The notes under the pieces are model-generated. The model did no database searches and was not told the DNA's origin. It saw nothing but the letters and a program-made list of their open reading frames with translations. A stretch of 63,963 bases of DNA, the filler included, from Dugesia japonica (taxonomy: Eukaryota), in assembly GCA_001938525.1 (NCBI GenBank). It is 6 parts of 6 records of this genome, joined end to end, with 100 filler letters (N's around TTAATTAATTAA, not from the genome) between each part and the next. Parts side by side here need not be neighbours in the genome. Positions count along the whole stretch, not along the records: positions 23,590 to 33,343 come from MQRL01629468.1; 5 more parts are not named here. One strand, given 5' to 3'. Positions 23,490 through 36,200 of this stretch are shown in pieces. The translations under genes and the position numbers were made by a program. Positions within the stretch are counted from its first letter, which is position 1, and each line of letters starts with the position of its first letter.

Positions 23490-23934
23490 NNNNNNNNNNN
23501 NNNNNNNNNNNNNNNNNNNNNNNNNNNNNNNNNTTAATTAATTAANNNNNNNNNNNNNNNNNNNNNNNNNNNNNNNNNNNNNNNNNNNNAACATTGCGAG
23601 TAAATTGCATCATTTAGTAACCGTTCTAGAATTTCAACACAAAAATGATTACATTTTCTGTTTTTATTAATTTATTGAAAGTTTTGAAATTTTCATTAAA
23701 ATTTCTATAAATATCATCAGTGAAGTTGACCATTTTTGTACACTTTTCTTAGCTATTTTCTTAATTATTTTGATTGAGTCTTTCAAATGTTTTATAGTCT
23801 TTAATAAATTATCAATAAAATAAATATCAATATGCAGTTTTGAGGTTTTCCTAATTTAATGTTTTGAGCATCATGTTGAAACAAACAAACATAACCACTG
23901 GGTTTTTAATATATCAATTATTATTATTATTATT

Positions 23935-24170
23935 TAAAATAAAAGCTTCCATCATAATTTGTCTTTTTGAGTTTAATTCAATATTTCGACTTTGTTTTCA
24001 TAAGGAATTGATTTTCTCAATTCCTGACGAAGTTAAAGTCGAAATGTTGAATTAAACTCAAAAACCGAAAAAACAAATTTTGATCGAAGCTTTTATTTTA
24101 AATCAATTCTATAAAACGATCAATGGTTACGTCCAAAAATTATTCTCGCCATAATTGCAATTACAAAATT
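23935..24170. repeat. Second inverted pair of Penelope pseudo-LTR/hammerhead fragments
   Basis: Hammerhead-like motifs at 23975-24010 (-) and 24018-24053 (+, AATTC CTGACGA agttaaagtc GAAA tgtt GAATT). Confidence 0.7.
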
Positions 24171-24243
24171 ATTGTTATTATTATTAATATTATTAAATAA
24201 ATTTCAATTCTAATTGACAGTGCAAAATAATTTATTCAACAAC

Positions 24244-24752
24244 CTTTAATGTAGCTCCAAGTGTTATACCATAAGCTATTCCTATACCAAATCCGGCGAG
24301 TAAACCAAATGATAAAATAACAACCCATAAATACGACTTAAGAGTTGCATACATTAATAGAACATTCAAACTGAAAATTGATACAAAAATTTACAATGAA
24401 TGGAAATAAAACTTTTGCCTCATAAACCACCCTCCTAAAATTGCTGTTAACGAAGAGCCAATTTTCATTTCAATAAATCCTCCAAGTGAAATCGTTGCTC
24501 CAATTCCTAATAAAATTGTTCCAAATAACCAGGAAATATTTTCTAAAGTGCCCTCAGATTGTGAATGACTATTATTTCTCATGTATTCAAAGATCATTCT
24601 TTTAACACCTCCTTTACGTTGTTATCCAGTTAATGAAATAAATTTTTTAATGACAAGTTTATCATACCTGCTGTAAAAAAACCACCAAGAGTTATATTAA
24701 TTATGAATGCTCCAAATATTATAAAATATGGTTGTAATTTGAAATTATACAT
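24244..24752 (-). CDS. Host MFS transporter (oxalate:formate antiporter/MCT-like), first three coding exons: 24752-24668, about 24611-24419, 24370-24244
   Basis: Spliced MYNFKLQPYFIIFGAFIINITLGGFFTAG..EYMR..ISWLFGTILLGIGATISLGGFIEMKIGSSLTAILGGWFMSLNVLL..SFGLLAGFGIGIAYGITLGATLK. MFS motif A-like G.I..KIG.. and GxGxGxAY present; introns are about 50 nt. Confidence 0.85.
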
Positions 24753-24925
24753 TTCTCACAATTTATTAAATTTTTGATTTGTAAAGAATCATATAAATTA
24801 AAATTAATTCCTTAATTTAAGTGAATATCACCCGTATTAAAGATTTTTTTGATCAATTAAAACAAATTTGAAAATTCTAATAGATTATAATAGGTTAATA
24901 GATTATAGTTATTTTTCTTACTTTT

Positions 24926-24926
<1 letters not shown>

Positions 24927-24989
<63 letters not shown>
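24927..24989. repeat. (TAA)n microsatellite; (TTA)n also at 44556-44584 and 44981-45040
   Basis: Direct reading of the sequence. Confidence 0.95.
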
Positions 24990-25899
24990 NNNNNNNNNNN
25001 NNNNNNNNNNNNNNNNNNNNNNNNNNNNNNNNNNNNNNNNNNNNNNNNNNNNNNNNNNNNNNNNNNNNNNNNNNNNNNNNNNNNNNNNNNNNCCGAATAT
25101 CTCTAGCATGATCACCATATTAATTGAAGCAACGTTATTATGAGGCTTTTCAATAGTAACTTTTTTAATTAAAACAACTTGATTCCTTCAACATCTTCAA
25201 AACTATCAATGAACATCACATATTACTGTCATGATGTCTTACTTATATTATGTCTTATAATTCTAAAAATTTAATTAATGATTGCCTAAAATGACAAAAG
25301 GTTTTGATTGCTCAAATAATAATTTCAAATATACATTTATTCTTTTCTGGATTTTCATTATGGCTGTTAATAAGTCTTCTAGCAATTACAGTAGCTAATA
25401 ATATTTAAACAAACTATACTTTAATTAAATTTCATTTTAAATAACGAGTTTCAGTTAATTATTTCATTTGAAAATAAAAAATAAAATATTAAATACAGAA
25501 ACCAATTAACAAAAAATTAGATTTATAAAGAAATTCAAATATTAAAGAATATTTGAAAGACTAAATTTAATGTTAAATTATAATATTATTTTTTTAAAAA
25601 TTTAAAAAAATAAAATTAATTAAAAAAATTAAATGTTTTATAATATTACACAATAATAAAAAAATTAAATAACAAAAAATGATAAAAGAAATAATTAATT
25701 GTAAGTATTAACAATAATCAGCTTATCCAGCAAATGGAAATGGTGATTTTTAAATTTCCGAACAGTTGGTTGATTTTCCAATTCATTTTGTTGTTCATAG
25801 TTCATTGTGAAAATGTAAAATAATAAAATAAATTTATACATAATATTCTTTAATAATTAATTTGATTTATTTAAACAATGTATGTATATATTTTGCAAT

Positions 25900-26319
25900 T
25901 TATTTGATTATTTCATGATAATCCAATGACTTTAGTCCGAGAATAACAACTTTTCCACTTGCAAAAACATTGACACATAATGGCTTGTATTTGTTGACTT
26001 GTAATGCAGGAAATAATTCTTATTCGAACCAACAATCTAATACACTGTTCAGCTTAAATAAATGCACTCCTAGTACAAGATCACATGTGACAGTAATTGA
26101 TTGGAAACCATCTATTTGGATATTGACATTTTTGCAAGTGATTTGTTTATCCGAGATTGGTTTTTTGGATCCCATGATGCGACATTTTCCCGATTCAAAA
26201 ACAATTACTGAATAATCTTTAATTTTCACTACACATTGTCTGGATTTTTTCCAGGTATTAAATTGAAGATCTGAAGGTGAATCAATTAGATGAGCTCTGT
26301 AATTATTATTAGATAACAT
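25900..26319 (-). pseudogene. Compact TBP-like protein encoded in the Polinton (about 140 codons, one internal stop)
   Basis: MLSNNNYRAHL..YSVIVFESGKCRIMGSKK..FQSITVTCDL..CWFE*ELFPALQVNKYKPLCVNVFASGKVVILGLKS, compared with TBP LIFSSGKMVCTGAK and YEPELFPGL..KP..LLIFVSGKVVLTGAK. Intronless. Confidence 0.85.
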
Positions 26320-26383
26320 TGTTTGATGAATGATCAATAATCATGTGCTTATATACTCTTTTTGTATAAACAAAATAATTTCT

Positions 26384-27816
26384 ATGGTTTCTGTAAAGTT
26401 TTACTACAAAACAACGCGGTTTTTCAAATAGTTGGTCCTAGTGGAAGCGGCAAAACATTATTTTTTTGCAAGTTACTACAAAGCAAATTGTTTCGAACAA
26501 AATTTCAAACATATTTATTGGCATCAAGGTGGTAGAAGTGAAGCTGCTTGACTAATGGTAAATTTGGCAAGTTTAGAAATATTTCGATAATTGATGGATT
26601 CAATGAGGAGTAACAATAACTGCTTGTCATGGTAATGTAACTGTCATCTTCATCACTAAAAATATTTTCCATCAAGACGGTATGCATCGTACATGTAATT
26701 TTAATTTCCATTATTTGGTTTTATTCGAAAATCGGCGAGATCAAACTGTGGTTGATTATGTTTCTCNTCAAGCATTTCCTCGCAATGAAGAATTTTTATC
26801 AGATGCACTTATTATTACAAAACTACATGGATATTTATTTATTGATTTTGTTGAGGTTTGAATAGTTAAACAAATAAGCAAGCAGTATATACAAGCAAGC
26901 AATGCATACAATACATAATAAACACAGCAGAACAAATTTTCAAATCAATATCGATCGCAAAAACCCTCAAATCAATATCGATCGCAAAATCCTTGAATCA
27001 ATATCGATCCCTGAAAATCAATCAAATTCAAGTGTGTGGACACTATATTTTTTAAGACATTATGTTTGGTGATGTTATATGTTATTTTATTATATATTAT
27101 TTTTATTAATTTAATCCAATGCTGACAGTAAATTATGACATTATATTTTATTTGGATTGGAATTCGATGAAAATTTCGAAAATTTATTAGTTTATGTTAT
27201 TGTATTTGATAACAATAATAATCATGAATATAATTGATGTTTATTCATGTAAATAATTTTAGAAAATTGAATATAATTTATGTTTAACAATAATAATCAT
27301 GTAAATATGTTTGGAAAATGTTTATAAAATAATTGTAAAATTAATGTTAGACACTAGGTCAATGCATGAAGACCTAGTGTGAGTTTTACTATAAATACTG
27401 ATGTATATCAGTTCAGTCTCAGACAAAATTTAATTTAGAGAACNNNNCTCTTTGATTGGCTTCTCTACTTTAAAATTAAACTGAGCGCTATAAGCTGTAG
27501 TATCCTAATTTTGGTGTAAAATAATTATTATAGAAGTACGTATTGAGTTTTATTTGAATAAGGAAATTTACATATATCAGTTATTTATATTTTTGCTTAA
27601 ACAATATTAGTATATAATAGTTGTATTTATATACATACAAAGGGAAAATCAAATCCCCTAAAATCATCATTGGAAATTATATCTTATAGTTTGAAAAGAA
27701 AATTCGAACCACAAAATCTTTTGTTGAGTTAAATACCCAACAATTTTACGCAACAATGTCCTAATGATGAACGAGTAAAAACCGATATATTCAATTCGGA
27801 AGGAATAACGGTTTAA
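26384..27816 (+). pseudogene. Polinton A32/FtsK-like packaging ATPase, interrupted by a solo LTR
   Basis: FQIVGPSGSGKT (Walker A) and HGNVTVIFITKNIFHQ..RTCNFNFHYLVLFENRRD..HGYLFIDF|TQQCPNDERVKTDIF. The frame rejoins once 26849-27746 is removed. Confidence 0.9.
26849..27742. mobile_element. Solo LTR (894 bp)
   Basis: TGTTGAGGT...ACCCAACA ends with a 4-bp TSD ATTT (26845-26848 and 27743-27746). Confidence 0.85.
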
Positions 27817-28069
27817 AACTCATGGGTATAAAGAAAACTAGTACTTAATAAAAAAGAAAACAAAAAATAAATAAATTTTAAAAGGTTTTCATCAAACAAA
27901 AGAGTTGTGGTGCTGGTAATTTGAAACTATTTTCTCGAAGTATTCCATACTTTAAGGCATTTTCAAGAGCTCCATCTAATTCTCGATGGCAAATTAGGCA
28001 CTCAATGCTGGTATTTGTAATGAACGATTTCATTCTTGTTTTGCAACAAATGTTTTTGAGCCGAGCCAA

Positions 28070-28361
28070 TGTTAATCAAAAAAATGGAAAATATTGATTG
28101 AATAAGTATCAATAAGCTCTTGTAGATATGGCAAAAGCAATGAACCTGGGAGCAAAGAAACGAATACTTGAAAGGCATTTTCTTATACAACGTAAAAACA
28201 AGAACAAAGACAAAAAACAAGTTTTTTATGGTAAAAGTGGGAATGGATTTGTTCGAGCTGCAGTTTTACCAATTATACGTTTGTTGGGTAAAGCAACTTC
28301 AACCAGTGCAGTTGGGGCTGCTAAAGAATATGCTACAAAGAAAATTATTGGTTCTGCATAA
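28070..28361 (+). pseudogene. Small basic Polinton core-like protein
   Basis: Basic ORF with KSGNGF followed by an amphipathic segment VLPIIRLLG; lies between the ATPase and the integrase. Confidence 0.5.
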
Positions 28362-28395
28362 AAAATTTAAATTCTTATTGATATTGCAATATAAA

Positions 28396-29456
28396 TGAGT
28401 GTTGCACCTTCTTCTTATATTCCAAACATTTCATTAAATATTCGTTGATGTGTTTTGCGCGATCAAGTTGATGGAACAACTATGATACAATTTAAAGGAT
28501 CCGATTGGATATACCTGTATTTCAAAGCTTGCAAATGCTGCAAGTGTTTCGGTAAAAGAGACGTAAAAATAGTTAGGTAACCAATTATTATATAGTTTGA
28601 ATAGACTAATGCGAAAACGATTTCCAACACATAAATCTATTATTGCTGGTGTTAATAGACTATGACAAATGAATTAGGTGGAAAAGATTCCATATGCAAG
28701 AATAAATAATGATTATAGATATATTTTTACATGTGTTGCTGTATTTGACCAAGTAGCACTTGCAGTTCCAGTAAAACGGAAATCTGGAAAAGATATTCTT
28801 TTGGTTTTGACGGTAATGTTTAAAGATATTCACAAGAAAGCTATTTAAACCAATTTGGTTAAAGAGTTTTACAATACTCAGGTCAAATCATTACTGAAAC
28901 AATATGGAATACTGCACTATTCAATATTTTCTCAGTACAAGGCTAGTACAGTATTGTTGAGCGATTTCATCGAACAAGGTAACAAAAATGGATAAATGCT
29001 TTTCCAAAAATGATTTATGCATACAATCATTCTGAACACAGATGTATTGGAGGACAAAAACCAGTTGATGTTACAGATGATGATGATTATACACAGTATT
29101 TTATCAATAAAAAGCCAAAACCCAAATATAAAATTGGACAACATGTACGGATTTCTCGAATTGGTACTCGGCCATTCATTGAAAACGTTGATAATAATTG
29201 GAGTGATGAAGCTTTTCAAATCTCAAAAATCAACACGAGACAGACCCAACTCATATATGTAATACATGAACAAGATGGTAATATTATTCAAGGCAAATTT
29301 TATGATCAGGAATTGCAAGTATCACCTGAAAAACCAAGTATATATCGAATCAAATCAATTCTCAAAACCAAAGGTCCAGAGCAATTTAAACAATATCTAA
29401 TTGAATGGCATGGCTTTTCAAAGCCTACGTGGACTCAACTATCTCAAATCCAATAA
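28396..29456 (+). pseudogene. Polinton retroviral-like integrase with C-terminal chromodomain
   Basis: NNDYRYIFTCV..AVPVKRKSG..KEFYN..YAYNHSEHRCIG..YKIGQHVRISR..NWSDEAF..GKFYDQELQ..QYLIEWHGF. Confidence 0.92.
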
Positions 29457-30776
29457 TGAATTTCTATATGGATTTGCCAAGCTATAGTTGCCCAAGAACT
29501 TGAACTGATAATAATGCGAGCAAATATTTGGTCGACTATAAGAATACTATCAATTTAAAAGATGACCATTGGGAAGTTGCCATGACGGAATTTGTTTTCA
29601 ATAATTGTTCACAGACTATACTGAAAGGTTCAAATATTGAACATAAAATACAAAAAGTGATGGAAATTGAAGATAAATTTCAATTAAGAGTTGTAAATGG
29701 TAGTCTTCAACTTAATAATACCGTCCCTATCAATACCATCCCTAAATATAACTGGTTTTTTATTTTCCAATGAAAAGAAAGTAGTATTGAAAACAGATTG
29801 TCAAGAAGAAATGGAGTTTAAATCGTTATCAGATGCAGAAAACTTTAGATTCAAATTAATAAATACCAAAAATAAGAAGCCATTAGTTTCAGTTAGTGAA
29901 TCTGATTAGCAGTTGATTCTGGAAAATATACCATCAATATCTTAAAAATTAAAGTTTAATACTATTGATGAAAGAAAGGCTAAAATAAAAGAAATTGAAG
30001 AAAATGTAAATGTTGAGATTAAAAATTGAAAACCTGTTGTTTCTGGATTGAAAATTTAAAAGAATTGCGAATTAATGGTGAAAAGAAAATAATTATCAAA
30101 TCTGATTGCAATATGAGATTAGAGTTTAATTAATTGTTTGATGATCGGTTACTGGGGTTTAACTCACAAAAGATGAAAAACAATCCGATGTATTCATTTA
30201 TCGAATCAGATACTCAAATATTGGATATTGTTAAATTAAAATTTACTGAAATCAAAACCGAAATGAATTATTTTGAATTTGAAAGTGATTTATTGGTTAC
30301 GGATAATCTGGTTACATCATTTATAAAATTATGACATAAAATATTTAAAGAATTTGTGATAGAATCAAAATGTGAACTGGTCATTTGATGAGAGTCTTTT
30401 GCTAGTACTCGGTCTTGGTTCTGCAAAATTCTACAAGTCTACATAACAAGTAAAGGGTTTGCATAAACCGTTATTACATGGTAGTATCCGACAAATATAT
30501 ATTTAATCATCAATAATCGATCCCATTCTGATTGGTGATATACGCGTGCTACTTTTAAGGAGTTTATGGGTTGATAGTAAAAAGCATTTATTTGGCAATG
30601 TTGTACATGTAAGACTTAAAAATTTAATGTATTTACCTGTATCATCATCTTCCATCAACAAAATTAAAGTAAACATACGTGATAATGCAAAAAGATTGAT
30701 TGTATTCCCATATGGATCAAAAACAAGTTTAACTCTACATTTTCGACAATTTTATTACAATTTGATTTATTACTGA
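29456..30776 (+). pseudogene. Polinton minor capsid (penton) protein
   Basis: N-terminal FYMDLPS..NNASKY..L...WEVAMTEF; C-terminal SIIDPILIGDIRVLLLR..YLPV..I.VNIRD..TLHFR. Confidence 0.85.
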
Positions 30777-30777
30777 A

Positions 30778-31118
30778 ATGGTTGATCGAGCTATTATCAC
30801 AATGTATAATTGTCCATAAATGGGTGGAGACTTGCCATATTTTACCTGTAGTCAACAACAACAAGGCGGTGGAAATTGACTGCATAGAATTGGACGTTTT
30901 GCAATTCCAACTTTGCAGAAATTCAGACTTCCAATAGCAAAGTTAGTAGGGCAAGCAGCACTAAAACCTTCGATGATATTATAAACCAGAAGTAGTCATT
31001 TAAAGAATCAATCAAAAACCAAGCGATGAATATGTTGCCAGATGTGAAGAAAAATGCACTTAGTGCATTAAAGAAAGTTGTTGATGGACAGCATGAAAGC
31101 TCTACATTTGAAAAATAA
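30778..31118 (+). pseudogene. Polinton core-like protein with glycine motifs
   Basis: MGGDLPYF..QQGGG..IGRFAIP..TFEK*. The same TIFEK* ending precedes the MCP at 59.3 kb. Confidence 0.7.
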
Positions 31119-31786
31119 CCCAAAAGATTCTATAACTGGGTATGCTGGACAAGTAATTGAATTCAATATTATTGGTTCAGATAATGATTACTTGGATTCG
31201 AATAATACGTTGCTCATTATTAAAATGAAGACTGTGAAACATGATGGGGACGGATTTTGCATCAACTGATACTACCGACATGGTTCTTTCCAATTATTTG
31301 CTTCACTCTCTATTCAAAGAAGCATCATTAACACTAAATAATATAAAGGTTAAAGACACAAATGATGCGTATATGCAAAAGGCGGTAATTTTGGAATGGA
31401 TACAAAAACACTTTTCTTAAAGCCATTGGTTTTCATAAAAAAGAAGACAAAAGAAAAGGTTTTATTAAAAGATCTGCAAACCTAACGCTTTCTGGTGCAC
31501 TTAATGTGGATTTCTTTGATAAACCAAAGTATCTATTGCCGGGAGTCAATATTAAAATTAAATTGACGAGAAATGTGAGTTTGATAATTCACAAATATAC
31601 TTAAGACGTTAAAGAAACAGTTAAGATGAATTCACAACCGTATATTATAGAGGCAAAATTGATAATGGGATGTGCTTTTGCTGATCATTTGGTTATGATT
31701 GAACATCATCAAGGATTGGAACATTGAAATACAATCTACTCTTTCCAGAAAACAAAAATCGTACATTTTCCAATTCCAAAAAACTC
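31119..31786 (+). pseudogene. Polinton major capsid protein, partial (both ends deleted)
   Basis: PKDSI..VIEFNIIGSDNDYLD..T, NYLLHSLFK and GALNVDFFDKPKYLLPGVNIKIKLTRN. Confidence 0.88.
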
Positions 31787-31985
31787 ACATGTTGAGCATT
31801 GAATTGCTATTCATGTCAAACCGAAAATTATTCGTGTATTTGATCTAATGAGTATGTTTTATTCATCATTGCCGGTAACAGAATTGTAGCGTATGCAACA
31901 GCCTGTTGAATACAATCAAATCATGTATCAGAATTCATTGAAATTTTTATGTGGACAATATTGTATCGAATGGCTGAAAACCTAG
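31787..31985 (+). pseudogene. Adenain-like cysteine protease, C-terminal part
   Basis: EH(W>*)IAI...RVFD...YQ...CGQYCI contains the His, Asp, Gln and Cys motifs. Confidence 0.82.
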
Positions 31986-32479
31986 TATAAACAATGTTAA
32001 TGTGATTATCAAAAATATTTAAAATTTCTGTGTTTTAATTGATTATGAAGCCTTTCAGGATAAAATGGTTACTATTTAATCAAATATTTATGTATAATGG
32101 ATGTGGATAATATTCTTCAATAACCGTTTTATTACATGTTTGCCATGACGGAATCAATGGGTAGTTTATCAAAATCTGCTCAGACTGGTGGATTGATAGA
32201 GATTGTAAATTTGATCCAATTCGAATTTCTAATGATGCTTTGTTTTATGTGAATGATCACGTGATTGGAAAGAAAATCAATACTCTCAAAATAATTTTCC
32301 TGAGTCTTCGAATTGTCAATTATAACTTAAATGAACAATTATGTATAATAGATAATATTTCCTGTCCATATTATAATAATGAGGATTATTGTGCATTATA
32401 AAGATCAATACGCCATGGTTCTAATTTTTAATACAAAAATAATGTGAAATTTTTCATGTTAATTAAAACAAAAAAATTA

Positions 32480-33230
32480 TTTTACAATTGCAATTATTGC
32501 GAGAATAATTGTTGGACATAACCATTGATCGTTTTATAGAATTCATTTGATGTAAAAGCTTTGATCAAAATTCAGGTTTTAATTATTGATGTTGGATAAC
32601 AATTCGATATTTCGACTTTGTCTTCGTCAGGAATTGACTTTTTTAATTTATTCAATATTTATGTTTATAATAGTAATAATTTTTGAAATAATTTATTTTT
32701 ATTAAATTTTAATTGGATAATTTTAATTTTTATTTTATATTTAATTATTTAATTTAATTATTGTAAATTATATTTATTTTAGGACTGCTTTCCTTGATTA
32801 TTATTTCTTCATGTTTTTTTCTATGTAGTGGAGAAATGTAGCCTGTTCCTAGTGTTTTCCATGTAATGGGATGTTGTTCTGGTGAAATATTATGTTTGTG
32901 TTGAAAGTGTTTGAATACTTCACTTTCTTTTTGTTTGAAATGCTCCTTAACTCTTGTTCGTACGGTTCTGCATGTTTCACCTATATATGTTTCTTGAAAA
33001 ATTGTGCATGTTATTTTATAAGTGACATTTTTCTTATTGCATATATTTCTACCATCGCAAATGTATTTGGGCCCACAAAAAGTTTATCTTGGTTTCTGTA
33101 ATTGGATGCCCAAAGGTGCTTGCGTTTTGAAAATAATTCTTGTATTGTGTTTGAGTTTTACATTTTTTATTATATTCTGCATGATTTGACTACATTTCTC
33201 ATTATTAAACGGTAATTTAATAAAGTAGAT
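32480..33230 (-). mobile_element. Penelope-like element 3' part: GIY-YIG endonuclease plus pseudo-LTR
   Basis: KNVTYKITCTIFQETYIGETCRTVRTRVKEH..EEIIIK...PKIN, followed by the hammerhead-bearing repeat. Confidence 0.9.
32600..32636 (-). ncRNA. Minimal type I hammerhead ribozyme (intact core)
   Basis: CAATTC-CTGACGA-A-GAC-AAA-GTC-GAAA-TA-TC-GAATTG: stem I CAATTC/GAATTG, stem II GAC/GTC, palindromic ATAT in place of stem III, AUC cleavage triplet. Confidence 0.75.
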
Positions 33231-36200
33231 GGATAGTGGGAGTAAAGAACAGCACACATTCAGTAGAACACCCCCCCCGCCCCCTATACGTAATCGGATT
33301 ATGACATAACTGTTTTTAAATTTTTCTAATGTAAATAGGCGGCNNNNNNNNNNNNNNNNNNNNNNNNNNNNNNNNNNNNNNNNNNNNTTAATTAATTAAN
33401 NNNNNNNNNNNNNNNNNNNNNNNNNNNNNNNNNNNNNNNNNNNAATAATAATAATAATATATAAAGACAATATACAATTACAGGAATTATTGCGGGAATA
33501 ATTTTGGTACTTCGTGAGTGATCGCAATTTGGAAGTTTCAATAAATTGAAAAGTTTTGATCAAAATATTTTTTTTAATATTTTTTATTATTATTTATATT
33601 CTTTAAATTGTTAGTATTTCAAATTTTTGATAACTATTTTCTTAAGGAATTAATTTTTTGATTTATTCAAGATTTATTTATTGTAATGGAACAACTTTTG
33701 GATTTTATTTTATTTTATTGAATTTTAATTGGTTATTTCATTTAATTGATTTTAAGTTTGTCTTAAAAGTTTATCTTTATAGTTTTTCTTTAATTAGTAA
33801 TTAATATAACTTTAAAAATCAATACCAAATTTGAAACTATATTGATTTTCAAAATATAAATTATAACTTATAAACTTTAAACTACTATTACAATTTTCAT
33901 AAGCTTAATGGAACTACACATATTAATACGCCACGATTAACATAGCAATTTTCAGACTGAAAACCCCATTGCTTGGCACCATAGATTGGATGTCGCAGGG
34001 AAATCAGCTTACAGGACTTTCACAGCTCGAACTAACCAATTATTGCATCTATTATGTATCTTTTAACTAATTATGCGTATCCTTTTGATGATCTAATGAT
34101 GAAACCTATTCAAAGGCAGATAATTCTAAGAGGATTTGAAAGAACCTAACTGTAAACACTAGAATACGCGAACAATTAAATACGATGTGGTGTACTCATT
34201 TTTGCACTGAAAATACAAAAGGTTATCTCTAATCAAACACCAGCCAGGCTCAGTCGACATTGTTCACTTTATGAGTACTAACGATGTCTAGTTCTGCTTA
34301 ACCTCCAAGATCTGGTGTACCCTACATAGTATGATAATTAATCAATTTAAATAATTTTTTTTGGTTCAAAATTTTATTATCAAAATAAATATAATGAACA
34401 AATCCAACAAAAATAATTAATTCATATTATCCTACCAAAAATTTCAATAACTACACTTTTAATCGTATTGTTCGCCTAAACATTTCATCCAAACAAATTG
34501 CATAACACTAAACAAATTACATTTCCAAAATTATAAATGTCCAAACGATACACACATACATAATAAGTTAGGAAAATTTTTTCGACCAATGAAATTATCA
34601 ACCACTTTGGCAATAGAAACTATTTACACCCGGTGGGATGAGGGGTGATCTGGCACTGCTCTACTTTTGCGGTGAGAAGGAAGCATTTTCGATAGTAATC
34701 CCCTAGGAAACATATAGATAGTTTTTTAATCACAGTCGAATTGTGATGATCAAATTTAATTTAGTAATTTAGTTTTACATTATTTTACAAATATTTTCGA
34801 AATTCNNNNNNNNNNNNNNNNNNNNNNNNNNNNNNNNNNNNNNNNNNNNNNNNNNNNNNNNNNNNNNNNNNNNNNNNNNNNNNNNNNNNGAATTTCTTGT
34901 GTTTTGAATATTAAAACGATGTTATATAAAATAAATAATTCACCTACACGCCAAATTATTTATAGGAGTCAGAAATCTTTGTTAGAAAACTTACATCCCA
35001 CTAGGAATCTAACATAATGATATCAATAGTCATAGCCATACAACAATTTTCAGCCAGTTTAATTAAAAACCGAAATTCTAAATTCTTGCGTGAATATCCT
35101 ATCAATCAAAGGCAAAATATTTTTCTCTACTGAAATGTGACGACCAGTCAAAAGGAAAAGTTTTCATATCACCAAAATTAACGTATCACTTTTCCGGAGG
35201 GGGAACGGAGATGAGAGTGATCCGGTTTTATAATATATTACTACTTACTAGTTATTTCATTGTTTACCATTAGCTGAAGGATAACAACAACAGTATATTA
35301 TTTTATATCTGTGTAAATAATGTTTTATTACTTTTTTTCCTACTTCATAAAGTAATAAATTATTTATTTCATTAAATTGCTAATGATTTGATCAGTGAAC
35401 ATATTTACTTTAGATTTTCATGAAATTCTTCTTGAAAATTTCCAGTCCAAGAGAATATAAATGATCATGTCAAATTGTCAGTTCTATATTAATCATTCTA
35501 CAATAGACTCCTCAAAGTCTACCATAAATAATCTGGATTAGTGTCAGTCTTGATGCAGATAGGAAAATTTTTATTTTTCTGTCGATATTGATTAATAAGT
35601 TATTTATAATATAATATTATATTATAAATTGATATTATAATATTTTTATAATATTTTTATTTATAATATTTTTAATAATAATAGTAATAACAATAATTAA
35701 TATTATTATTTATTTTATATTGATGATTAATTAAAACAAATATAAATTTAGTATAATATATCAAAATATTATGAAAAAATTTAATTTTGTCTACACTGGA
35801 AGCATTTCATTCAAGTGTGTACTAAATTGTTACTCTATATGGTATAAGATCTTATCGTAGCTCTCAATAATGTTAAATAATTTCTAGATGACACTTATCC
35901 TGTACGCATAACGCAATTATTAGAGATGGTAAATCCACTTGAACTGTTCAATTCTCTTGATACAATATAATTTAATGAAATTCGGGACAAAGTCATCATT
36001 TAATGGCTGATTTACTGTTGATAAAATGTATCAACAATCCGATTAAGATATTTATATCTTCATTTAGTTAACGTATCAACTTCGAGTAATTGAAAATCAT
36101 CCGTTTTTTAGCATTCAGCCTTCAATTTTGCTTCATCGTGTGTGGGTGAATAATATTTTCAGTATTTGTTACTTAGCTCAGTTTACTGGGTTGCTTTAAA

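What the first reader, a model, noticed from the sequence alone, without database searches (positions are those of the whole stretch)
25900..26319. Polinton/adintovirus-like element encoding its own minimal TATA-binding protein
Seen: an intronless reading frame of about 140 codons with both TBP repeats (IVFESGKCRIMG; FE*ELFPAL..KP..NVFASGKVVILG), head-to-head with the packaging ATPase of a Polinton. The ORF track shows only half of it because of one stop. Known: TBP is encoded by many giant nucleocytoviruses but is not among the usual Polinton genes (pPolB, INT, ATPase, PRO, MCP, mCP). By manual alignment, three of the four DNA-intercalating Phe positions and the acidic second-repeat stirrup (E-x-E-L-F, which contacts TFIIB) are kept. 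The first Phe is lost, and the basic helix H2 region is shortened and contains proline. Inference: an element-encoded TBP that could recruit host Pol II machinery to element promoters, or act as a TBP mimic or competitor. I am not aware of a description of this, but cannot search the literature.
Basis: partly seen in the sequence, partly recalled or inferred. Interest (0 to 1): 0.93.

Follow-up and report, generated by a model that had tools for sequence, protein, structure and literature searches.

The report
Decayed Polinton gene for a minimal TBP
The window holds a dead copy of a short TATA-binding-protein gene that turns out to be a standard gene of one lineage of Polinton (Maverick) virus-like elements, whose other genes nearly all carry the same TATA-like box just upstream, so these elements probably bring their own promoter-recognition factor.

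Summary
On the minus strand, 25867-26319 is a TBP-like reading frame, head-to-head with a packaging ATPase. This copy is a pseudogene with two in-frame stops and no frameshift, and every other gene of the element here is broken too.

A natural intact relative (P0001; 64% and 84% identical to the two pieces) passes Pfam TBP (56.9 bits). Its AlphaFold model (pLDDT 90) matches only TBPs in the PDB. The first repeat lacks both helices, and three of the four intercalating Phe positions are invariant.

The family is large: at least 302 clusters, almost all from metagenomes. In 10 of 10 longer contigs examined, 3 of them sampled through the capsid gene rather than through TBP, the gene sits in the same module. 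That module has an A32-type ATPase, an rve/chromo integrase, a double-jelly-roll capsid protein and an adenain-like protease. Three of the contigs also show pPolB.

New here: TATAAAC lies about 33-38 nt upstream of most genes of these elements, on the sense strand. Enrichment is 27- to 80-fold in hold-out loci.

The likely role is element-specific promoter recognition; this is inferred, not shown. Precedent is a bare "TBP" gene label in Starrett et al. 2021. The host is unknown.

The parts
25867..26319 (-). TBP-like pseudogene with two TBP repeats, the first one shortened. It has two in-frame stops and no frameshift, and about 98% of a relative's length can be aligned.
25707..25796 (-). Fragment of the gene that follows the TBP gene in L001. 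The function is unknown and the match is weak.
   Evidence: (E 4e-4)
26320..26394 (.). Divergent intergenic region with two TATA-like boxes back to back. One is a TATA-type box on the minus strand 36 nt before the TBP start codon. The other is TATAAAC on the plus strand at 26365-26371, before the ATPase.
26395..27813 (+). Packaging ATPase pseudogene (A32/FtsK-HerA type). It has at least 2 stops and at least 1 frameshift. The start codon seen in L001 is not kept. About 0.8 kb of extra AT-rich, partly tandem-repeat DNA lies inside it.
   Evidence: Pox_A32 reaches 30.8 bits in relative L005
27930..28304 (+). Small conserved gene (homologue of the 101-aa gene of L002). It has 2 stops and about 90 nt of extra length.
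28471..29432 (+). Integrase pseudogene (rve core plus chromodomain in relatives). It has 8 stops and at least 1 frameshift.
   Evidence: PF00665 and PF00385 are on record for the relatives
29456..30752 (+). Conserved gene of 346-413 aa with unknown function. It has at least 2 stops and at least 1 frameshift, and only about half can be aligned.
30778..30954 (+). Fragment of a conserved gene of about 105 aa. It has 2 stops and about half is present.
31117..31790 (+). Major capsid protein pseudogene (double jelly roll in relatives). It has at least 2 stops and at least 2 frameshifts, and the C-terminal half is missing.
   Evidence: fold of the relative P0280
31794..31979 (+). Fragment of an adenain-like protease gene. 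It has 2 stops and is partial.
   Evidence: Peptidase_C5 reaches 31.7 bits in L005
32073..32413 (+). Fragment of a conserved gene of 152-174 aa with unknown function. It has 1 stop and at least 1 frameshift.
30980..30986 (+). TATAAAC box in the sense direction, just upstream of the capsid-gene homology.
31986..31992 (+). TATAAAC box in the sense direction, just upstream of the homology to the 152-174-aa gene.
24017..24185 (.). Left arm of an inverted repeat of about 170 nt (88% match with 32465-32637). It is either a terminal repeat of the element or one of two copies of a small foldback element. This is undecided.
32465..32637 (.). Right arm of the same inverted repeat.

Best explanation
The feature is a decayed copy of a gene that belongs to the standard gene set of one lineage of Polinton/Maverick elements. 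The gene encodes a minimal TBP of about 145-165 aa. Its second repeat is complete. Its first repeat keeps the beta-strands of the saddle but has lost both helices and one of the four DNA-kinking Phe residues.

In intact elements the protein most likely binds the lineage's own TATA-like box. That box is TATAAAC, usually preceded by T and followed by A, and it sits about 33-38 nt before the start codon of most element genes. Through its conserved second-repeat stirrup the protein would then bring in the host's TFIIB and RNA polymerase II. Element genes would thus be transcribed from their own class of promoters, with little dependence on the host's TFIID and on regulators that grip the TBP helices.

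Shown here: homology, fold, conservation under purifying selection, constant linkage to the Polinton module, and the promoter-box enrichment. Inferred: DNA binding, box specificity, TFIIB contact, and independence from host regulators. In this window the gene and the whole element are dead.
For: Identity and fold:
- Pfam TBP for P0001 at 56.9 bits.
- All PDB sequence hits are TBPs.
- AlphaFold model with pLDDT 90.1 and pTM 0.81.
- The 44 best Foldseek PDB hits are all TBPs, aligned over both halves, with TM about 0.65. NCLDV TBPs lead the hits in BFVD.

Conservation:
- 109 representatives at E<=1e-10 and 302 clusters found with the profile.
- Phe 45/45 at three positions, and Glu-x-Glu-(Leu/Ile)-Phe-Pro at 42-45 of 45.
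- dN/dS 0.13-0.25.

Linkage:
- All ten longer loci, L002-L011, carry the gene beside ATPase, integrase, capsid gene and protease.
- L009-L011 were sampled through the capsid gene, not through TBP.
- PF03175 pPolB is present in L007, L008 and L009.
- The capsid model matches double-jelly-roll capsid proteins.

Promoter box:
- In L002-L006 there are 33 TATAAAC hits in 6,384 nt of sense-strand upstream windows, against 14 in the other 92,566 nt (odds 34, p 7e-29).
- Hold-out loci give odds of 27 (L007/L008) and 60-80 (L009, L010, L011, each p<=4e-6).
- Sense to antisense is 45:4, and 24 of 45 boxes lie inside the preceding gene's coding part.
- In the window, three plus-strand boxes stand at the expected places.
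Against: - No binding, transcription-start or expression data exist.
- The TATAAAC box could simply be read by the host's own TBP.
- The first repeat is strongly reduced and one Phe is missing, so productive DNA bending is not assured.
- The TBP genes' own upstream boxes are mostly other TATA variants. This fits a cascade but proves nothing.
- Six box hits at about -98 lie in chromodomain-coding sequence and may reflect coding constraint.
- Gene starts are those of automatic gene callers.
- Several loci come from the same samples: L002, L007, L008 and L009 share one, and L006 and L011 share another.
- Hosts are unknown.
Confidence: 0.6

Rival explanations
1. The protein is a TBP-fold decoy or competitor. 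It occupies TATA boxes or ties up TFIIB, TFIIA or other TBP partners without starting transcription. That would damp host or rival-virus genes rather than drive the element's own.
For: The first repeat has lost both helices and one Phe, while the TFIIB-facing stirrup is kept. Herpesvirus TBP mimics appear among the weaker fold hits.
Against: It does not explain a sense-oriented box at a fixed distance before most element genes. The three retained Phe and the saddle strands are invariant, as expected for real DNA binding.
Confidence: 0.15
2. The elements live like virophages. On this reading the TATAAAC box is a promoter read by the transcription machinery of a co-infecting giant virus, and the small TBP works with that machinery rather than with host Pol II.
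For: Giant viruses encode TBP homologues, which are the best viral fold matches. Virophages and Polinton-like viruses are known to share promoter motifs with their giant viruses (established knowledge; see also PMC11464507, listed).
Against: The elements carry an integrase with a chromodomain and sit as several diverged and decayed copies in AT-rich eukaryotic DNA. The stirrup has the cellular TBP pattern. No giant-virus genes were seen nearby.
Confidence: 0.1
3. The protein is a DNA-bending accessory factor for replication, integration or packaging. For example it might act at the element's ends and have no role in transcription.
For: The gene lies next to the packaging ATPase in several loci and near one end of the gene module.
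Against: The position varies. In L003, L004, L006 and L010 it lies after the protease. The conserved stirrup and the promoter-like placement of the box point to transcription.
Confidence: 0.1
4. It is a processed pseudogene of the host's own TBP or TRF, or a chance frame, that merely lies beside a Polinton.
For: This copy is broken, and its pieces fall below Pfam's cut-off when taken alone.
Against: The same short architecture is linked to the Polinton module in L001 and in all ten longer loci. Identity to cellular TBPs is only 20-26%, against 64-84% to P0001. dN/dS is well below 1.
Confidence: 0.02

Closest known systems
Cellular TATA-binding protein and TBP-related factors (Pfam PF00352)
   Same: Two tandem TBP repeats form a saddle. 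The second repeat is complete, with the acidic stirrup and both Phe. The best PDB matches are archaeal and eukaryotic TBPs.
   Different: It is about 150 aa, against a core of about 180 aa. The first repeat lacks helices H1 and H2 in the model and lacks one Phe. In the second repeat a Ser is invariant where the TBPs aligned have Asn. Identity is only 20-26%. It is encoded by a mobile virus-like element.
TBP homologues of giant viruses (Nucleocytoviricota)
   Same: Both are virus-encoded TBP-fold proteins presumed to serve virus-specific promoters. They are the top matches in the viral structure library.
   Different: The giant-virus proteins are longer (190-500 aa) and act with a virus-encoded RNA polymerase. 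The Polinton loci seen here encode no polymerase subunits, so a host polymerase must be used.
'TBP' genes labelled in MELD (midsize eukaryotic linear dsDNA) viruses with adintovirus-like PolB (Starrett et al. 2021, PMC8502044, Fig. 5 legend; bioRxiv 10.1101/697771)
   Same: These are Polinton-like genomes carrying a gene 'similar to TATA binding proteins'. TRAF-like genes are labelled in the same figures, and MATH/TRAF genes adjoin the TBP gene in L002 and L009.
   Different: The paper gives only a legend label, with no sequence analysis, structure, family survey or promoter motif. I could not tell whether it is the same lineage, because the figures and supplements are not held.
Herpesvirus TBP mimics (KSHV ORF24 / UL87 family)
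   Same: Both are viral proteins with a TBP-like domain that direct host Pol II to a non-canonical TATA-type box on viral late genes (PMC12529657, listed). They give weak fold matches.
   Different: The herpesvirus proteins are large multidomain proteins with no detectable sequence homology. Here the protein is a bare, clearly homologous TBP core.

Membership tests
TBP family (PF00352) | Significant match to the TBP repeat profile, twice in tandem | tested here: met
   P0001 scores 56.9 bits against a cut-off of 22.9, with 2 stretches. The window's two pieces score 13.4 and 20.8 bits alone but are 64% and 84% identical to P0001.
TBP family (PF00352) | Saddle fold built from both repeats | tested here: met
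   Model with pLDDT 90.1. The 44 best PDB fold hits are all TBPs, with 171-196 aligned columns and TM 0.57-0.69.
TBP family (PF00352) | Each repeat has the full S1-H1-S2-S3-S4-S5-H2 layout | tested here: not met
   In the model, helices appear only in the second repeat (110-116 and 159-172). The first repeat has strands only.
TBP family (PF00352) | Four Phe that kink the TATA box (two per repeat; established knowledge) | tested here: not met
   Three positions are Phe in 45/45 members. The position matching the first Phe is never Phe.
TBP family (PF00352) | Acidic C-terminal stirrup that contacts TFIIB (established knowledge) | tested here: met
   Glu 43/45, Pro 40/45, Glu 44/45, Leu/Ile 44/45, Phe 45/45 and Pro 42/45. 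These align to the same stretch of PDB TBPs.
TBP family (PF00352) | Binds and bends TATA DNA and nucleates a pre-initiation complex | not testable with these tools
   No complex prediction or assay was available.
TBP family (PF00352) | Open reading frame in this window | tested here: not met
   There are two in-frame stops.
Polinton / Maverick | Protein-primed family B DNA polymerase | tested here: inconclusive
   PF03175 is on record in relatives L007, L008 and L009. None was found in the window piece. The large minus-strand genes of L005 and L011 gave only an endonuclease VII match, and that of L010 has no Pfam family on record.
Polinton / Maverick | Retrovirus-like (rve) integrase | tested here: met
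   Window 28471-29432 is homologous to the rve plus chromo genes of relatives (E down to 2e-56). Here it is broken.
Polinton / Maverick | Double-jelly-roll major capsid protein | tested here: met
   The model of relative P0280 (pLDDT 88.6) matches iridovirus, PBCV-1, Sputnik and mavirus capsid proteins, with E down to 7e-17. The window has a fragment at 31117-31790.
Polinton / Maverick | A32/FtsK-type packaging ATPase and adenain-like protease | tested here: met
   In L005, Pox_A32 scores 30.8 bits and Peptidase_C5 scores 31.7 bits, both above cut-off. The window has broken homologues.
Polinton / Maverick | Terminal inverted repeats with a 6-bp target duplication | tested here: inconclusive
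   A 170-nt inverted repeat at 24017-24185 and 32465-32637 could be the termini or two copies of a foldback element. No clear duplication was seen.
Adintovirus (animal-tropic) | Animal host and adintovirus-type PolB and virion genes | not tested
The host of the window and of all the loci is unknown.

The most novel reading that the evidence does not exclude
One lineage of Polintons carries a self-contained promoter system. A stripped-down TBP has shed the surfaces used by host regulators. It is specific for the lineage's TATAAAC box, whose odd 3' half would face the altered first repeat. The TBP gene itself would be switched on from an ordinary host-type TATA promoter and would then turn on the rest of the element. 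That would be the first described transcription programme of a Polinton.
Probability: 0.4. Interest if true: 0.8.

Novelty: new variant of a known kind. Interest (0 to 1): 0.68.

Why it matters
How Polintons/Mavericks get their genes transcribed is essentially unknown. A conserved element-encoded TBP together with a box shared across the lineage gives a concrete model that can be tested on existing transcript data. It extends virus-encoded TBPs from giant viruses and mirusvirus-like elements down to 15-20 kb elements that must use a host polymerase. The protein is also the smallest two-repeat TBP I am aware of (from my own knowledge, not checked here). It acts as a natural deletion experiment, showing which parts of the TBP saddle can be dispensed with. 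The box itself is a handy marker for annotating genes and strands in this lineage.

Tried and rejected
- **Alternative genetic code.** A ciliate-type code would remove the stops, but this was rejected. All three stop codons occur in frame (16 TAA, 5 TAG, 13 TGA), they align to many different residues, and no coherent long frames appear under table 6.
- **Pfam on window pieces.** Only weak TBP and A32 hits and a GIY-YIG hit came back. The integrase and capsid pieces were silent. Their identity came from tblastn with genes of intact relatives.
- **The 1396-aa minus-strand gene of L005.** Pfam, PHROGs and PDB sequence searches gave only an endonuclease VII-like stretch. A polymerase assignment for that gene is therefore left open.
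- **Capsid protein by sequence.** The PDB profile search and Pfam found nothing. Only the fold search settled it.
- **TATAAAC as a poly(A) signal for the preceding gene.** This is unlikely. 24 of 45 boxes lie before that gene's stop codon, and boxes also occur in divergent intergenic regions (window 26365).
- **Host identification.** Rfam and tRNA scans found nothing. Full-text searches for the sample and assembly accessions found nothing.
- **Inverted repeat.** Whether it is a terminal repeat or a foldback element could not be decided.
- **Mending the gene.** The finding's proposal to mend the gene before searching was not carried out. A natural intact relative was used instead.

Full report
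**What is in the window**

The piece 23590-33343 is very AT-rich (14-35% GC) and has three runs of N, which I left alone. It starts at the ATG at 26319.

Measured against intact relatives, the gene ends at 25867, not 25900. It therefore carries two in-frame stops and no frameshift. Alone they give the TBP profile PF00352 at 13.4 and 20.8 bits, just under the 22.9-bit cut-off, and both match the same part of the model.

**An intact natural relative**

The longer piece found one close protein among 5.8 billion. This is P0001 (174 aa), from a 942-bp contig of a public sequencing run.

- The two pieces are 64% and 84% identical to it.
- At the DNA level the contig (L001) aligns with the window through the gene, through the short intergenic region, and into the start of a P-loop ATPase on the other strand. 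The head-to-head arrangement is therefore real and shared.
- dN/dS between the window copy and L001, computed for each piece on its own, is 0.25 and 0.13. Most of the divergence thus built up while the gene was under purifying selection.

**It is a TBP**

- P0001 passes Pfam TBP with 56.9 bits and two stretches.
- Its PDB sequence matches at E below 1e-6 are all TBPs, archaeal ones first.
- A profile of 45 family members gives E 8e-22 to 1e-14 against PDB TBPs. In each case the family's second half aligns to a whole TBP repeat.
- An AlphaFold model of P0001 built with that alignment is confident (pLDDT 90.1, pTM 0.81).
- Its 44 best PDB fold matches are all TBPs, aligned over both halves, with TM about 0.65.
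- In the viral structure library the best matches are giant-virus TBPs. Herpesvirus TBP mimics appear further down.
- In the model the second repeat has the usual strands and two helices. The first repeat has the strands only, so both helices are gone.

Column counts over the 45 members (P0001 numbering) are as follows:

| Position | Residue | Members |
|---|---|---|
| 64, 127, 143 | Phe | 45/45 each |
| 123 | Glu | 43/45 |
| 124 | Pro | 40/45 |
| 125 | Glu | 44/45 |
| 126 | Leu or Ile | 44/45 |
| 128 | Pro | 42/45 |

The position that matches the first Phe of a normal TBP is never Phe. That these are the DNA-kinking residues and the TFIIB-contacting stirrup is established knowledge of TBP structures. 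I did not test it here.

**A large family, always in the same company**

An exhaustive HMMER search with P0001 found 709 representatives at E<=1e-3 and 109 at E<=1e-10. Many are 140-180 aa and match end to end. The family profile found 302 clusters at E<=1e-10. Nearly all come from metagenomes and run assemblies, and JGI names them "TATA-box binding protein".

I looked up ten longer contigs.

- Seven were reached through the TBP gene: L002-L008.
- Three were reached through the capsid gene instead: L009-L011. This sampling is not biased towards TBP.
- All ten carry a TBP gene, which in L009 is a short broken piece.
- In all ten it sits beside the same module: an A32-type ATPase, a small gene, an rve integrase (often with a chromodomain), a gene of 350-440 aa, a gene of about 105 aa, a gene of about 410 aa, an adenain-like protease, and a gene of about 160 aa.
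- L007, L008 and L009 also show PF03175, the protein-primed DNA polymerase, on the opposite strand.
- In L005 the ATPase and the protease pass Pfam's own cut-offs.
- Sequence searches were silent on the gene of about 410 aa. A model of P0280 (pLDDT 88.6) matches double-jelly-roll capsid proteins of iridovirus, PBCV-1, Sputnik and mavirus, with E down to 7e-17.

This is therefore a true Polinton/Maverick lineage, and TBP is one of its regular genes. The gene's place varies. It lies before the ATPase in L002, L005, L007-L009 and L011, and after the protease in L003, L004, L006 and L010. It is inverted against the ATPase only in the window and L001.

**State of the window's element**

Genes of the relatives map onto the window in the same order, from 25707 to 32413. 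All of them are broken. The counts below are minimum values.

| Gene | In-frame stops | Frameshifts | Other damage |
|---|---|---|---|
| TBP | 2 | 0 | none |
| ATPase | at least 2 | at least 1 | about 0.8 kb of extra DNA inside; the start codon seen in L001 is not kept |
| small gene | 2 | 0 | about 90 nt extra |
| integrase | 8 | at least 1 | none |
| 346-413-aa gene | at least 2 | at least 1 | only about half can be aligned |
| ~105-aa gene | 2 | 0 | about half present |
| capsid gene | at least 2 | at least 2 | C-terminal half missing |
| protease | 2 | 0 | partial |
| 152-174-aa gene | 1 | at least 1 | none |

No polymerase gene was found in the piece. The stops are a mix of TAA, TAG and TGA aligned to many different residues, so this is decay and not a different genetic code. 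The TBP gene is the best-kept gene of a dead element.

**A shared promoter box (not in the finding)**

The 70 nt before each gene of the intact relatives showed the same short box again and again.

- In L002-L006, TATAAAC occurs 33 times in the 6,384 nt of sense-strand windows from -100 to -11. It occurs 14 times in the remaining 92,566 nt of both strands (odds 34, p 7e-29).
- The box was seen on those loci, so I tested it on loci fetched later. L007/L008 give odds 27 (p 2e-10). L009, L010 and L011 give odds 80, 60 and 79 (p 4e-6 to 2e-10).
- The usual distance from the first base of the box to the start codon is 33-38 nt.
- Sense to antisense is 45:4. Of the 45 sense boxes, 24 lie inside the coding part of the preceding gene. 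That argues for a promoter and against a poly(A) signal.
- Around the six-base core, T precedes it in 45 of 70 sites and A follows it in 55 of 70.
- Generic TATA patterns are much less enriched (odds 2.6).
- In the window, TATAAAC is no commoner than chance overall (5 found, 3.8 expected). However, the three plus-strand copies stand just before the ATPase, capsid and 152-aa-gene homologies.
- The 75-nt region between the TBP and ATPase genes holds that box on one strand. On the other strand a different TATA-type box lies 36 nt before the TBP start codon.
- The TBP genes' own upstream boxes are mostly other TATA variants. In L002 and L008 they come with a CCAAT-like element. I note this only as a hint of a two-step programme.

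**How it most likely works**

- Shown: a conserved, selected, TBP-fold protein is tied to a Polinton lineage whose genes share a TATA-like box at promoter distance.
- Inferred: the protein binds that box and recruits host TFIIB and Pol II through its conserved stirrup.
- From established TBP structures, the first repeat lies over the 3' half of the TATA box. Here the box departs from the usual pattern in its 3' half (a C at the seventh place), and the protein departs in its first repeat. This correlation is suggestive only.
- Losing the first-repeat helices would remove surfaces that host regulators of TBP are known to use. This too is inference.
- The rival readings (decoy, partner of a giant virus's machinery, non-transcriptional DNA bender, host pseudogene) are weighed in their own sections.

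**Literature**

Full-text searches for Polinton or Maverick together with TATA or TBP terms gave one relevant precedent. Starrett et al. [quoted passage not shown] TRAF labels appear in the same figures. There is no further analysis, and the figures and supplements are not held. Another paper mentions TBP genes in mirusvirus-like elements, not in Polintons. Only open-access literature was searched.

- The host of the window and of every locus is unknown, so the "adintovirus" label is untested.
- Several loci share a sample.
- Gene starts are those of automatic callers.
- No complex prediction was possible.
- I fetched eleven loci of unknown host by exact protein look-up. From them I read only gene tables, translations and upstream stretches, and I built nothing.

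Noticed in passing
window 32757-33083 (-): An open frame of 109 aa has a GIY-YIG nuclease domain (PF01541, E 1e-5, above the cut-off), preceded by a Cys-rich stretch. It may be the endonuclease end of a Penelope-like retroelement lying just outside the Polinton remnant.
   Followed up: partly
window 24106-24852 (-): Three short frames have hydrophobic, transmembrane-like stretches. They have no match in any relative of the element and no Pfam hit. They may be exons of a host membrane-protein gene, in which case the inverted repeat would not mark the element's end.
   Followed up: partly
window 23932-24103: A near-perfect palindrome of about 170 nt overlaps the outer part of the left inverted-repeat arm. 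It looks like a foldback or MITE-like unit.
   Followed up: partly
window 24927-24989 and 24990-25092: A run of 21 ATA repeats abuts a 103-N assembly gap. The gap was left untouched.
   Followed up: no
window 26860-27600: About 0.8 kb of extra AT-rich DNA lies inside the ATPase pseudogene. It includes a 26-27-nt tandem repeat at 26940-27019 and four N. Its origin is unknown.
   Followed up: no
L002 854-1858 and 5476-6447; L009 3952-4941: MATH/TRAF-domain genes lie directly upstream of the TBP gene in two diverged elements, so they may belong to the element. TRAF-like genes are also labelled in the figures of Starrett et al. 2021.
   Followed up: no
L007 6320-6742; L011 1649-2092: Accessory genes differ between elements. 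L007 has a RING-finger gene between the TBP and ATPase genes, and L011 has a dUTPase gene.
   Followed up: no
L005 7378-11568 (-); L011 9926-13786 (-): Very large minus-strand genes (1396 and 1286 aa) sit where others have pPolB. Their only detected domain is an endonuclease VII-like stretch. They may be a polymerase with an inserted nuclease.
   Followed up: partly
L002 about 11520, L004 about 3640, L006 about 4140, L007 about 8905, L008 about 9665: A TATAAAC or ATAAAC box sits about 98 nt before the gene that follows the integrase. It lies inside the chromodomain-coding sequence, at the same place in several loci. It is either a dual-use sequence or a coding coincidence.
   Followed up: no
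L002 7330-7400; L008 5680-5747: The TBP genes of these two elements have a CCAAT-like element (in reverse orientation) and a TATA variant upstream, instead of TATAAAC. This is a possible sign that the TBP gene is read by host factors first.
   Followed up: no
window, all element genes: Many of the in-frame stops align to Arg, Trp and Gln codons of relatives. That is the pattern expected from C-to-T and G-to-A changes, as in methylated or otherwise silenced repeats.
   Followed up: no
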